The notes under the pieces are model-generated. The model was not told the DNA's origin and ran no database searches. It was given only the letters and a program-made list of their open reading frames with translations. Source: Hemiscyllium ocellatum (lineage: Eukaryota). From it: 64,000 bases of DNA. Each line of letters opens with the position of its first letter. Positions within the stretch are counted from its first letter, which is position 1. This document shows positions 13,806-26,746 of this stretch, piece by piece. The DNA is taken from NCBI RefSeq assembly GCF_020745735.1, contig NW_026869259.1:124001-188000 (forward strand), in the 5' to 3' direction. The position numbers and the translations under genes are program-made.

Positions 13806-13819
13806 CTGCCCTCTAGTGG
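13806..13819 (-). promoter_or_regulatory. CTCF core motif (CCACTAGAGGGCAG), points back toward C1
   Basis: Exact match to the CCASYAGRKGGCRS consensus; positionally conserved in paralogous units. Confidence 0.6.
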
Positions 13820-16659
13820 CGAGAGAGCGCTTGCACTGCTGCTGAGGATTATGGGTAAAGTCCCCTCCCATTCGCGCCCACACAAACCAGCATCCACTTC
13901 AGCTGCTTTATTGAAAACCACAAGCTTTCAAGGCGCTGTTCTTTCAACGGTGGAACTGGACGCACGGTCATACGAATTAGGGACAAATGAAGGAGATTCA
14001 TCCTCTTCAGCCTGCTCCCCATGGCTGACCTGATTATTCACCTTCTTACCTTACTCTGACAGATTTTTGATCAGCAATGACTGTCTACTTCTTCACTACA
14101 AGCATTCAGACGTCTCAATTTCAATTCCAAAGACCTATGACCTTTGCAAGAAATCAAAACCCTGCTCATCTAGATCTTAAATGAGGGAACTTATTTTAGT
14201 TTTATATTCTCCCTGAAAAGGAAGCATTCTTTTCACAGCCACGCTGTATTCTATGCTCTTGTTGATATGACATCTGCTTTAATCAGCTGCTCTCCCATGA
14301 GAACAGCAGCCTATCCTGCCACCTTCAATGACTGATGCACAGAAACATCCAGGTCCTACTGCCCCTACACCCATCCATACTTGTACCCTTTAGTTTGTTT
14401 TGTCTCTCCACCTTTTCCTTCCAAAATGAATCAGTGACATCTCTTTCTATTAAATTCTATCTGCGACCATTTGTTCATTCCATTACCTATACCCTTTTTG
14501 AAGTTCGACACTATCTTTTTCATGAGTCGCAGTAGATCCAAGTTTCATACCATCAGCAAATTTTGAAACCATGCCTTGTGCACTCAGATTTAAATATTTT
14601 AAATAATTTTAGAATGAACTATTTTATAAACTATTGTAAATTAAACCTCAAATTTATTGCCCATCTCTAGTTGCTTGGACTGAGTTCTGAGCCAGATCAT
14701 GGGGCTGTTAAGAATGAATCGCGTCACTGTGTGGGACTGGAGTCACAGACCGGGTGATGACTGGGTTCCCTTGTCCAAACTACATTCATGAACATGACAT
14801 TGAGTTTCATTGTTTTTTTGTTCAGGTCCCAGCGCCTTCCTGCCCAGATATTACATGGCTCACCACCACCCTCTCCAGGACAATTAGGGAAGTGCAACAA
14901 ATAGCAGCCATTTTTGTGCCCGCCCATCCCAGGAGAAATCAAAATAAATGAGATACACTTCAAATGATCAAACTGGTGAGGCTTGAATTCATCTCTTTGA
15001 AAAACTGGAGCCTAGGTGAGAAATAGAGCCATGACATGGGTGACCCTGGTTTGTCAGACTGAAAGGTGGAGTGTCCTTTGGATTGACACTGGGATCAGAC
15101 ACAAAATGAATTACACTCAAAGACCGAACACACGGCTATCAAAGCGGGTCACCAAAGTACAAAGAGCAGCAATTTATCTGGGAGACCTCAACAGGTATCA
15201 TTGGGTGTAAGAGCATTAGGCAGGCAAGTGTCAGATATTGTAGAACACACCAGAAACACAGTCACACAGAAAGGGAAGCTATTGGGATAGAGCAGGGAAA
15301 CGGGAATAACTGAATTTCTCCACTGAGAGCTGGGAGAGGTTTTCTCGGTTGTAACTCCTCTGAGAATGATAAAGCTTGAAGGGCTGTTTATATTATAGTC
15401 AACACTGCAGCGCGCAAGAAAGGATGTGGAGTGACAGATCTCCTTTAAATTGGAAACAATATCAGAAATAAAGGTCAATGTGATTTTGGATTGAATATTT
15501 AGAGTAAGGAGATGGAGGGGAGAGTGACCATGGCAGCTGTCCTGAAGAATGGTTAGGTCATGGCTAGAATGGTGCACAGTTAGAGGCTGCTTTGAGGGAC
15601 AATACATAGGGGGACATGGACAGGGGATCTAGGGTCACCAGAGATGTGCAGGATAGCAAATGGAAAATGCCATGGAAAATGCAGGATTACAGGGATAGGT
15701 CGGGTAGGTGTGGGTCGGGGTGGGGTGACCTTCAAAAGGTCTGTATGAGCTTGCTGGACTGTGTGGCCTGCTTCCACTCTGTAGGAATTCCTCGATTCTG
15801 TGATTCTATGAAGGCCAGAACAGGATCTCAACAGTGGAGGGAGGGTATTCTGATGTTCAAAAATTCTGAAACAAATAAACACAGTAAATGTAGATTTATC
15901 GTCAGTGCAGACAAACTGAAAGGCAAAATGACTTATTCTCCAGTCATATACCAGGTACAGAAAATAGATCAGGAAAAATATTTTGTTGCAATTATTGGAA
16001 CTTAATGATGAATGATGATAAACAGAGTGCTCCATTCAAAAAAAGACAGAATTACTTTTTAGAATTTCAACAGGCCTGAAGCAAAAGAGGAAATCAGGAT
16101 CAAATAGTCATTTGAGAATATAATACTTGAGTGAGACAAAGCTCTTCTTGTGAAAGCATTTCATTTGGCCTTGCTTTCTCTCCATGGATGCTGCCTGACC
16201 CGCTGGGATCTCCAGAGTTTTGCTGTGCAATTTCTTACAAATTGTCTTGTTGTGTGCAAGACAAAAGCTTTGACAAAATGTCTCTTTTTTTTCAGCAACA
16301 CTTGAATTTGGATCAGTTTGGAGAGAAAGCAGGTCCATGGAATCATCTTTCCCTGCAGGGAGGGAGGGAGTGTGTGTGGAATCTCCCATGGGCAGGGTTC
16401 TCCTGGCTGCCACCACATCAGGAAGGCTGGAGCTTGATGATCGAGCTGAATGGACAGGGCTCACTCTCACAGTCCTCAGGGCCATGGAGTCTCTTGTGAT
16501 GGGAGCATCTGCTTGGTGTCAGGGCACACAATGACATTGCAGTGGGATTGGAAATGGGACAACTCGACAATGGATGCTGCACAATGGCTGCACTGCTTCT
16601 TCCCCTCTGTCTATACCCTCCCCACACACAGGAGAAGTTGCATTAGGAACCTGTTCTAA

Positions 16660-17390
16660 AGGGCTACAACCCACTGCAGCACTCCCAATCTGCAAAGAGA
16701 AGAACACTTCTACAAAGACTTTGCCAAGAACAGATATTCCCGCAACTTCATCCACAGATGCAAACAACGCGATGAGGGTATGCCACGACCTAACTCACTA
16801 TCCACACTACCTTATATAAAAACATCACAGAACTCCAACCACTCATAAACTGCCCAGAAACTGAGCCACGCTCAGACAACCCACGAGAACAAAAGGCCCA
16901 TACCCAACGTGTGAAAGACAGATGTAATTTACAAGAATCCATGCAACGTTTGCACGAAAGACCTCTGACAAACAGGCAGACAACTAGCCATGCACATCCA
17001 TGAACACCAACGAGCCACTAAACCCCATGAGCAGCTGTCCCGAGTAGCTATACACACAGATGACAAGGACCACAAATTCGACTGGGCCAACACTATGATC
17101 ATAGGGCGAGCTCAACAGAGGACAGCCAGAGAATTTCTAGAGGCATGACACTTATCCATGGGATCCATCAATAAGCACATTGACCTACACCCAGTATACC
17201 AACCACAGCAATGAACATCAGGAACCAATAACTGGAAACAGCAGGAATGGAACCAAATAAGTTCCAGAAGACACAGCACAACAGCACTTCACAGGAAGCT
17301 CCAAAGCTCTGAAGATGTCACCGAGACAGGGGACAAAATGTTTACAAATCAACTTCCCAGCTCAGTGAGCATACCCACAACTACAGCAAG
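16660..17390 (+). mobile_element. Degenerate Penelope-like element 3' part (second subfamily)
   Basis: GIY-YIG-like remnant (gtaatttacaagaatccatgc...caaacaggcagacaactagcc...catgaacacc) and terminal ctgaagatgtcacc...gggac motif at 17309-17345. Confidence 0.6.
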
Positions 17391-26119: not shown

Positions 26120-26345
26120 TGTGGGCGGCACGGTGGCACAGTATTCAATTCCCACCTCAGGCTACTCTCTGTGTGGAGTTTGCACATTCTCCCCGTGTCT
26201 GCGTGGGTTTCCTCCGGGTGCTCTGGTTTCCTCCCACAATCCAAAAATGTGCAGGTTAGGTGAATTGGCCATGCTAAATTGCCCATAGTGTTAGGCGTGG
26301 ATTTGTTGGGCCGAAGGGCCTGTTTCCACACTGTAAGTAATCTAA
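26120..26345 (+). mobile_element. HE1-type SINE (internally deleted)
   Basis: Head gggcggcacggtggc, body and tail motifs. Confidence 0.8.
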
Positions 26346-26732
26346 AAAAAATGCGTTGAGCTTTTACTTTGAACTGTCAGGTCTCTTTTCCCATGCCTCT
26401 CTCCTCCCACCTCCTTCCAAGCCTTTCACCATATGTTTCCTGTGACAGCCTTGCTGTGCAGAATGAAAGCTCTCTGTGTTCTCTGAGCCCTTGCTCTATC
26501 TTGTGTCTGTCTACTCTCCAATGTTCATTTACTCAGGAAGGTAAGTGTTACAGAATTAAGTGGGAATATGTTCCAGGTCAGCCATGGCCTGACTGACTGA
26601 CTGGGGAACCAGGCCAAAACAACTGATAATTCATTCCCACTGGAATCCACCGGAATGGCTGCAGTTTCGTTCAGATGCTCAATGCCCGGGACTTGACGTG
26701 TGGTTCTCAGCAGCGGTACCAGCACTCTATAG

Positions 26733-26746
26733 CCACTAGAGGGCAG
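26733..26746 (+). promoter_or_regulatory. CTCF core motif (CCACTAGAGGGCAG), points toward C2
   Basis: Identical to the 13806-13819 motif, at the paralogous position. Confidence 0.6.

What the first reader, a model, noticed from the sequence alone, without database searches (positions are those of the whole stretch)
13806..26746. Divergent pair of perfect CTCF cores, each pointing back at its own C exon: candidate cluster insulators
Seen: CCACTAGAGGGCAG on - at 13806-13819 and on + at 26733-26746, 300-330 bp distal to the 136-bp block and overlapping a CAGCTG. The third paralog (35653-35666) has 4 core substitutions. Known: divergent CTCF sites mark loop-extrusion boundaries, and CTCF elements bound mammalian Ig loci. 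Inference: each cluster carries its own 3' anchor, a possible mechanism for the largely intra-cluster rearrangement of shark Ig genes.
Basis: partly seen in the sequence, partly recalled or inferred. Interest (0 to 1): 0.7.

Follow-up and report, generated by a model that had tools for sequence, protein, structure and literature searches.

The report
CTCF-type site behind shark kappa clusters
Two identical strong motifs for the genome-folding protein CTCF lie behind shark antibody light-chain genes, but they are two copies of one ancestral site on an inverted duplication, they sit beside mostly dead genes, and nothing yet shows that CTCF binds them.

Summary
CCACTAGAGGGCAG occurs exactly twice, at 13806-13819 (-) and 26733-26746 (+). 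Each copy lies 300-328 bp distal to the near-invariant 136-bp block and overlaps a CAGCTG. The third paralog, at 35653-35666, has four substitutions.

The two sites are not independent. They lie on the arms of one inverted duplication (10650-16342 and 21751-30167, 77% identical). The 18-nt exact run around the core is one of 22 such runs, so identity and divergent orientation are inherited.

Contigs from four shark species cover the core with no common variant across 13788-13827, while the proximal flank varies about every 10 nt. The conserved island is about 105 nt, so the motif is no better kept than its distal flank.

Other limits:
- The decayed third copy also occurs in other species.
- The "own" C exon of site B is an orphan pseudo-exon.
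- A broken C fragment lies between the two sites.
- The only V-J-C cluster wholly in the window is defective.
- No convergent partner was found.
- There are no binding data.

The most likely reading is a real protein-binding element, probably a reverse-oriented CTCF site at the cluster's 3' end. The insulator role is untested. This scan found the same kind of pair before on other pieces of this genome (s1-191592, s1-203492).

The parts
13806..13819 (-). Perfect CTCF-type core, copy A (CCACTAGAGGGCAG), in the 3' tail of the + strand kappa cluster whose C exon is at 4456-4767
26733..26746 (+). Perfect CTCF-type core, copy B, in the 3' tail of the orphan C exon at 32670-32966 (-)
35653..35666 (+). 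Decayed paralogous core, copy C (TTACTGGAAGGCAG, 4 transitions), in the 3' tail of the C exon at 48169-48501 (-)
13786..13892 (.). Conserved island of about 105 nt holding core A and the overlapping E-box. High-depth contigs of two species span it with 2-3 differences. No common variant is listed at 13788-13827.
13371..13506 (.). Near-invariant 136-bp block, copy A (copies B at 27074-27209 and C at 36123-36258), 97-99% identical among the three. Candidate 3' control element, proximal to the core.
10650..16342 (-). Left arm of the inverted duplication that carries core A
21751..30167 (+). Right arm of the inverted duplication that carries core B. It includes a 2.7-kb LINE-type insertion at 23117-25778.
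4456..4767 (+). Intact kappa-type C exon of cluster 1. Its joined VJ lies before the window start, according to scan note s1-198117.
32670..32966 (-). Orphan kappa C pseudo-exon. A 19-bp deletion removes the last six codons (RRSECV) and the stop. No V or J was detected anywhere in 33-58 kb, and only about 2.5 kb separates it from the next tail.
19474..19797 (-). Broken C exon fragment with its 3' flank (18993-19417), lying between the two cores near the centre of the palindrome
48169..48501 (-). C exon of the only V-J-C cluster wholly inside the window. Its tail carries the decayed core C.
57992..59062 (-). Leader, V (58537-58803), RSS and J of that cluster. FR1 is frame-shifted relative to the leader, the V heptamer reads CCCAGTG, and J reads FSKGT instead of FGxGT. 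Probably a pseudogene.
35686..35815 (+). 130-bp dispersed-repeat insertion with a target-site-duplication-like ACA(A/G)TACAA, 20 nt after the decayed core C

Best explanation
The two motifs are the two surviving copies of one ancestral, strong CTCF-type site. It belongs to the 3' tail of a subfamily of shark kappa light-chain clusters. It lies about 300 bp beyond the near-invariant 136-bp block and reads on the strand opposite to the gene. A tail-to-tail inverted duplication produced the divergent pair seen here.

The site is part of a conserved island of about 105 nt that is kept in many paralogous tails and in several related shark species. It is therefore probably a working protein-binding element.

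The most likely mechanism is inferred, not shown. CTCF binds the site and stops cohesin arriving from the cluster side. This would close the cluster's regulatory domain (promoter, C exon and 3' control block) at its 3' end and shield the neighbouring cluster, as the reverse CBEs do at the 3' end of mammalian antigen-receptor loci.

In this window the element is largely a relic. Site B follows a dead orphan C exon. A broken C fragment lies between the sites. The tail of the only V-J-C cluster wholly in the window has lost the motif.
For: - Exact match to the vertebrate CTCF core, with 0 expected by chance. These are the only perfect hits in 64 kb.
- The core and upstream motifs of CTCF are the same from lamprey to human (PMC5504073).
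- The mammalian matrix marks oriented sites at domain boundaries in a skate (PMC10115646).
- Position and orientation relative to the C exons and the 136-bp block are as described. This is the same geometry as the reverse 3' CBEs of Igh, Tcrb and Tcra/d (PMC10121685).
- Contigs of four species cover the core. No variant at 10% share or more is listed across 13788-13827, against 25 listed variant places in 13530-13787.
- Contigs spanning 13786-13892 (organism A, 2 differences) and 13800-13888 (organism D, 3 differences) have high depth.
- Exact 31-letter words of the 126-nt segment are held by organism B (up to 0.88), D (0.38) and E (0.25).
- The segment is not a dispersed repeat. There are no other copies in the window or in 91 kb of related loci.
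- In copy B the core is kept (37/40 in the island) while its distal flank has drifted to 58% identity.
Against: - There are no occupancy, accessibility or contact data.
- Identity of the pair is not exceptional within the window. The arms are 76.6% identical, and the 18-nt exact run with the core is one of 22 runs of 18 nt or more.
- Copy C lost the motif through 4 substitutions. The core is 71% identical there against 82% for its distal flank. The same variant with the same insertion is seen in organisms C and D (loose ends at 13799), so some tails have done without the motif for a long time.
- In the main family the whole island of about 105 nt is equally conserved, so conservation does not single out the CTCF core. 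Other factors could be the reason, for example the overlapping E-box.
- No upstream CTCF motif lies at the reported 2-7 bp linker. A GCAGTGCA-like word lies 12 nt away.
- No convergent forward site was found on the one V side in the window (59-64 kb) or within 10 kb 5' of V in L001-L003.
- The variant list is truncated (49 rows hidden), and the tool warns against using depth as copy number.
Confidence: 0.45

Rival explanations
1. The pair has no function of its own. The two cores are identical by descent on a fairly recent inverted duplication. The many near-identical copies in the genome reflect recent amplification or gene conversion among kappa cluster tails (concerted evolution), not selection on a CTCF site.
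For: - The arms are colinear over 5.7 and 8.4 kb at 76.6% identity, with 22 exact runs of 18 nt or more. The core run is not special.
- About half the depth over the core in organism A comes from one contig almost identical to copy A over 107 nt, as expected after recent amplification or homogenisation.
- The sites here flank dead genes.
- Copy C decayed freely.
Against: - The proximal flank 13530-13787 varies about every 10 nt among the same contig sets while 13788-13827 shows no common variant. The copies are therefore not simply young.
- Near-identical words are held in three further species.
- Copy B keeps the core while its distal flank drifted to 58% identity.
Confidence: 0.25
2. The island is a conserved regulatory element for other factors, and the CTCF match is incidental. 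It could be a second module of the cluster's 3' enhancer, using the CAGCTG E-box that overlaps the core together with neighbouring sites such as a kappaB-like GGGGACTTTACC and a TGTGGG.
For: - Conservation covers about 105 nt, far more than a CTCF core. The distal 60 nt are as well kept in the main family as the core.
- The E-box is invariant in all three window copies, including copy C where the CTCF core is broken.
- The island lies 300 bp from the near-invariant 136-bp block.
Against: - A 14/14 match to a pattern of about 22 bits is unlikely to arise by accident inside 105 nt (0 in 100 shuffles of 64 kb).
- The kappaB-like and other words are single-mismatch recollections, and they are not kept in copy B.
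- There are no enhancer data.
- This rival does not exclude CTCF binding as well.
Confidence: 0.2
3. The motif was spread by a transposable element that carries a CTCF site, as SINE B2 does in mouse, and has nothing to do with the Ig clusters.
For: - Contig depth is raised at 13880-13929.
- A dispersed repeat has inserted next to copy C.
Against: - The segment 13786-13870 has only the three tail copies in the window and none in 91 kb of related loci. The true dispersed repeat is found 4 times in the window and 3 times in the loci.
- High-depth contigs span from the core segment (13786-13870) into the segment 13871-13892 beyond it, which fits a tail-specific sequence.
Confidence: 0.05

Closest known systems
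Reverse-oriented CTCF-binding elements at the 3' end of mammalian antigen-receptor loci (Igh 3'CBEs; 3' proximal CBEs of Tcrb and Tcra/d)
   Same: Both lie downstream of the constant region and beyond the 3' control elements. Both have the motif on the strand opposite to the gene, so that it faces the locus (PMC10121685).
   Different: - A single motif, not a cluster of about ten.
- A unit of about 20 kb instead of a megabase locus.
- No forward partner CBEs seen on the V side.
- Present in only some cluster tails.
- Binding and looping untested.
Sis/Cer CBEs and the 'regulatory loop' of mouse Igk
   Same: Both involve a kappa-type locus. In both, CBEs are proposed to enclose J, C and the enhancers in a small insulated loop (PMC10121685).
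   Different: Cer and Sis lie between V and J, on the 5' side of the loop. The shark site lies 3' of C. V and J are about 470 bp apart in the shark cluster, so no V-J intervening region exists.
Divergent CTCF pairs at domain boundaries (shown for a skate)
   Same: Two strong motifs point away from each other, as at insulation minima in the little skate (PMC10115646).
   Different: Here the pair arose by inverted duplication, is 12.9 kb apart and encloses a broken C fragment. No Hi-C data support a boundary.
Earlier findings of this scan on other pieces of the same genome (s1-191592, s1-203492)
   Same: The same motif, the same tail position and the same divergent arrangement. Both notes also conclude 'conserved but not universal, inherited by inverted duplication, binding untested'.
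   Different: This is a different stretch of DNA. The evidence here was produced independently: the arm map, exact-run statistics, contigs of four species and the state of the flanking genes.

Membership tests
Vertebrate CTCF-binding element | Match to the 14-15 nt core motif bound by zinc fingers 3-7 | tested here: met
   14/14 match to CCASYAGRKGGCRS at both sites, and these are the only perfect hits in the window. The consensus was used as IUPAC from established knowledge, not as a scored matrix.
Vertebrate CTCF-binding element | Upstream motif (CTGCAGTTCC-like), 2-7 bp 5' of the core. This is optional and occurs in 13-15% of sites, mainly strong insulators. | tested here: not met
   The nearest resemblance, GCAGTGCA, lies 12 nt from the core in copies A and C and is altered in copy B.
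Vertebrate CTCF-binding element | Occupancy by CTCF and cohesin in vivo | not testable with these tools
   No ChIP or accessibility run could be identified.
Vertebrate CTCF-binding element | Core conserved more than neutral flank across paralogs and species | tested here: inconclusive
   No common variant at 13788-13827 in four species, against a variable proximal flank. However, the distal flank is equally conserved, copy C has decayed, and the variant list is truncated.
3' boundary CBEs of antigen-receptor loci | Located 3' of C and of the 3' control elements, in reverse orientation relative to the gene | tested here: met
   The control function of the 136-bp block is itself untested.
3' boundary CBEs of antigen-receptor loci | Convergent forward CBEs on the V side | tested here: not met
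   No consensus hit at 1 mismatch or fewer 5' of the V at 58.5-59.1 kb, nor within 10 kb 5' of V in L001, L002 and L003. The V side of cluster 1 lies outside the window.
3' boundary CBEs of antigen-receptor loci | Loop anchor or insulation seen in contact maps | not testable with these tools
   No Hi-C or Micro-C access.
Transposon-borne CTCF sites | Motif lies inside a dispersed repeat family | tested here: not met
   Only the three tail paralogs exist in 64 kb plus 91 kb of related loci.

The most novel reading that the evidence does not exclude
Functional shark Ig light-chain clusters of this subfamily are each closed at the 3' end by their own reverse-oriented CTCF site. Each cluster would then be a self-contained loop-extrusion neighbourhood whose enhancers and recombination centre cannot reach the next cluster. 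That would give a physical basis for cluster-autonomous activation and rearrangement, and hence for exclusion among many miniloci. Pseudogene tails would be free to lose the site.
Probability: 0.15. Interest if true: 0.7.

Novelty: new member of a known kind. Interest (0 to 1): 0.35.

Why it matters
Sharks carry their antibody genes as many small independent clusters. Rearrangement stays within a cluster, and only one or a few clusters are activated per B cell (shown for IgH, PMC2435157). How the clusters are kept independent is not known.

A conserved CTCF site at the 3' end of a cluster would extend the 3' CBE principle of mammalian antigen-receptor loci to the oldest Ig gene organisation. 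It would also give a concrete element to test by ChIP, EMSA and contact mapping.

As it stands, this is a motif-level prediction with conservation support, and this scan has already noted it elsewhere in the genome. In this window it mostly flanks dead genes, so its weight is modest.

Tried and rejected
- **More cluster tails from assemblies.** I made nine look-ups of annotated kappa light chains. Six returned no DNA because the sample file was too large. The loci L001 (Stegostoma) and L002 (older Chiloscyllium punctatum assembly) have tails colinear with the window. Their 10-kb flank ends 0.4-2.3 kb before the expected block and core. L003 is a compact cluster of another subfamily without this tail.
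- **Handle for read-assembled contigs.** I used the spurious ORF across the 136-bp block as a query and found no hits.
- **More proteins from accessible assemblies.** A second protein search found no further Stegostoma clusters.
- **RNA gene hypothesis for the block and the island.** There were no Rfam matches, and the folds are no better than shuffles.
- **Weaker CTCF-like motifs.** There are 15 hits at 2 mismatches or fewer against 14.7 expected, so no excess and no pattern. The 40-bp tandem array at 30319-30722 holds no CTCF-like word by this criterion.
- **Upstream CTCF motif.** It is not at the canonical spacing.
- **Transposon origin of the core.** Rejected.
- **Copy numbers from contig depth.** I considered this, but the tool warns against it. 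I use depth only to say that some contigs are multi-copy.
- **Earlier findings by relatives.** The search was blank.
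Full report
**1. Observation**

- The 14-mer CCACTAGAGGGCAG occurs exactly twice in the window, at 13806-13819 on the minus strand and at 26733-26746 on the plus strand. No dinucleotide shuffle gave a match.
- Both copies run into a CAGCTG (13803-13808 and 26743-26748).
- Both lie 300 and 328 bp beyond the near-invariant 136-bp block (13371-13506 and 27074-27209).
- The third paralog at 35653-35666 reads TTACTGGAAGGCAG, with four transitions. It is followed after 20 nt by a 130-bp insertion of a dispersed repeat.
- Against the degenerate vertebrate CTCF core CCASYAGRKGGCRS these are the only perfect hits in 64 kb. 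One further hit with one mismatch lies at 3072. At two mismatches there is no excess, with 15 hits against 14.7 expected.

**2. What surrounds it**

The window holds kappa-type light-chain gene pieces of an orectolobiform shark. The best protein matches to the C domain are Chiloscyllium punctatum (97%) and Hemiscyllium ocellatum (95-96%) kappa light chains.

The gene pieces are as follows.

| Piece | Position | Strand | State |
|---|---|---|---|
| C exon, cluster 1 | 4456-4767 | + | intact |
| C exon | 32670-32966 | - | orphan pseudo-exon |
| C exon | 48169-48501 | - | open reading frame kept |
| C fragment | 19474-19797 | - | broken |
| V | 58537-58803 | - | probably defective |

- The V of cluster 1 lies before the window start, according to scan note s1-198117. 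I did not test this.
- The C exon at 32.7 kb has a 19-bp deletion that removes its last six codons (RRSECV, including the C-terminal cysteine) and the stop. Only about 2.5 kb separates it from the next tail, and no V or J was detected anywhere in 33-58 kb, so it is an orphan pseudo-exon.
- The cluster at 48-59 kb is the only V-J-C cluster wholly inside the window, and it is probably dead too. The V frame does not continue from the leader, the V heptamer reads CCCAGTG, and J reads FSKGT instead of FGxGT.
- V and J are about 470 bp apart, and the J-C intron is about 9.5 kb.

**3. The pair is one event**

- Self-comparison shows a colinear inverted duplication. The arms are 10650-16342 and 21751-30167, and the right arm carries a 2.7-kb LINE-type insertion.
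- The broken C fragment lies between the arms.
- The arms are 76.6% identical over 3,897 aligned columns.
- The exact run that holds the core is 18 nt long (13803-13820). It is one of 22 exact runs of 18 nt or more, against 7.6 expected under uniform divergence.
- Within the window, therefore, neither the identity of the two cores nor their divergent orientation is evidence of constraint. Both follow from descent and from the tail-to-tail inversion.
- Duplicated sequence continues 2.5 kb beyond the core, so the site is not at the edge of the duplicated unit.

**4. Conservation beyond the window**

I laid contigs of one run from each of four organisms on 13280-14000 at 80% likeness. Organism A is probably the source species, and B, C and D are relatives.

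- All four organisms have contigs over the core.
- Among the listed variants (share of 10% or more) there are 25 variable places in 13530-13787, none in 13788-13827, three in 13828-13837, and two in the 136-bp block.
- A high-depth contig of organism A spans 13786-13892 with two differences. A contig of organism D spans 13800-13888 with three differences.
- A word search with 13770-13895 shows that exact 31-letter words of this segment are held by organism B (up to 0.88 of the sampled words), D (0.38) and a fifth organism E (0.25).
- The core therefore sits in a conserved island of about 105 nt that is multi-copy and shared among species, while the proximal flank varies.

Three cautions apply:
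- The list of variants is truncated, with 49 rows hidden.
- The tool warns against reading depth as copy number.
- The distal part of the island is as well kept as the core in the main family, so conservation does not single out the CTCF motif.

Loose ends at 13799 in organisms C and D carry the same repeat insertion as window copy C. The decayed variant is therefore old and shared, and not every tail needs the motif.

Pairwise identities within the window are as follows.

| Region | A-B | A-C |
|---|---|---|
| Core (14 nt) | 14/14 | 10/14 |
| 40-nt island (13788-13827) | 37/40 | 30/40 |
| Distal 60 nt | 35/60 | 49/60 |

Copy B kept the core while its distal flank drifted. Copy C kept the flank and lost the core.

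**5. What it is not**

- The core segment is not a dispersed repeat. It has only the three tail copies in the window and none in 91 kb of related loci. The inserted repeat beside copy C is found repeatedly.
- Rfam finds nothing in the window.
- Neither the block nor the island folds better than shuffles.
- The optional upstream CTCF motif (CTGCAGTTCC-like, 2-7 bp from the core; PMC12885311) is not present at that spacing. A GCAGTGCA-like word lies 12 nt away.

**6. Mechanism**

- The CTCF core and upstream motifs are the same from lamprey to human (PMC5504073).
- In the little skate the mammalian matrix marks oriented sites in open chromatin at domain boundaries, with divergent sites at insulation minima (PMC10115646). 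A perfect core in a shark is therefore a credible CTCF site.
- The most likely function, if the site is bound, is to stop cohesin at the 3' end of the cluster and keep its control elements from acting on the neighbouring cluster.
This is weak, because V and J are only about 470 bp apart and need no loop.
- A role in cluster-autonomous activation would fit the known exclusion among shark miniloci (PMC2435157). It is inference only.
- No forward partner was found on the one V side in the window (59-64 kb) or within 10 kb 5' of V in three related clusters.

**7. Attempts to enlarge the sample**

- I made nine look-ups of annotated kappa chains and obtained DNA for three loci.
- Two of these have tails colinear with the window, but they end just short of the block and core.
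- A search with the spurious ORF over the block found nothing.
- The full census across all clusters therefore remains to be done on the assembly itself.

**8. Verdict**

The site is a real, strong, conserved CTCF-type site in the right place and orientation. However, the pair is one duplicated site, the element is not universal, it flanks mostly dead genes here, it is not better conserved than its distal flank, and binding is untested.
- My literature searches found no paper on CTCF sites in shark Ig clusters.
- This scan has already reported the same kind of pair on other pieces of this genome (s1-191592 and s1-203492), with conclusions that my independent tests agree with.
- I file it as a new member of a known kind, of modest interest.

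Noticed in passing
window 57992-59062 (-): The only V-J pair in the window looks defective. The FR1 frame does not continue from the leader and a stop follows soon after. The V heptamer is CCCAGTG, and J reads YTFSKGTKLRL (FSKG instead of FGxG). V and J are about 470 bp apart, and the J-C intron is about 9.5 kb.
   Followed up: partly
window 32630-32745 (-): The orphan C exon has a 19-bp deletion that removes the last six codons (RRSECV) and the stop. The C fragment at 19.7 kb has a 1-nt deletion in the same stretch.
   Followed up: yes
window 13355-13454: In contigs of organisms A and D, summed depth over the proximal half of the 136-bp block is roughly 5-10 times that of the rest of the stretch. 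This part of the 'invariant block' may belong to a much larger sequence family than the kappa tails. The tool warns that depth is not copy number.
   Followed up: no
window 30319-30722: A tandem array of about ten 40-bp units (GGAGACCCAGGGCCCAGGCTCCGTGACTGGGGAGTGAGGT) lies in the tail of the orphan C exon. It holds no CTCF-like word at 2 mismatches or fewer. Other arrays lie at 20300-20570 (33-bp period) and 61317-61670 (44-bp period).
   Followed up: partly
window 13840-13875 (-): Inside the conserved island, distal to the core, there is a kappaB-like GGGGACTTTACC and a TAATCC word. They are kept in copies A and C but not in B. The resemblance is recalled from memory only.
   Followed up: no
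window 35686-35815; also 46069-46156, 31312-31388, 6077-6124; L002 33885-34078; L003 17102-17193: A dispersed repeat of about 90-130 bp begins AGTCAGAAGTCACACAACACCAGG. It inserted with a target-site-duplication-like repeat next to the decayed core. The same insertion junction appears in contigs of two other species.
   Followed up: partly
window 3072-3085 (+): A one-mismatch CTCF-like word, CCAGCAGATGGTGG, lies in the J-C intron of cluster 1, in forward orientation relative to that gene.
   Followed up: no
L001 20258-27784 (-): In the Stegostoma locus an annotated 1048-residue RabGAP-TBC gene overlaps the kappa cluster's 3' tail on the opposite strand. That cluster may therefore lie at the edge of the Ig region.
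   Followed up: no
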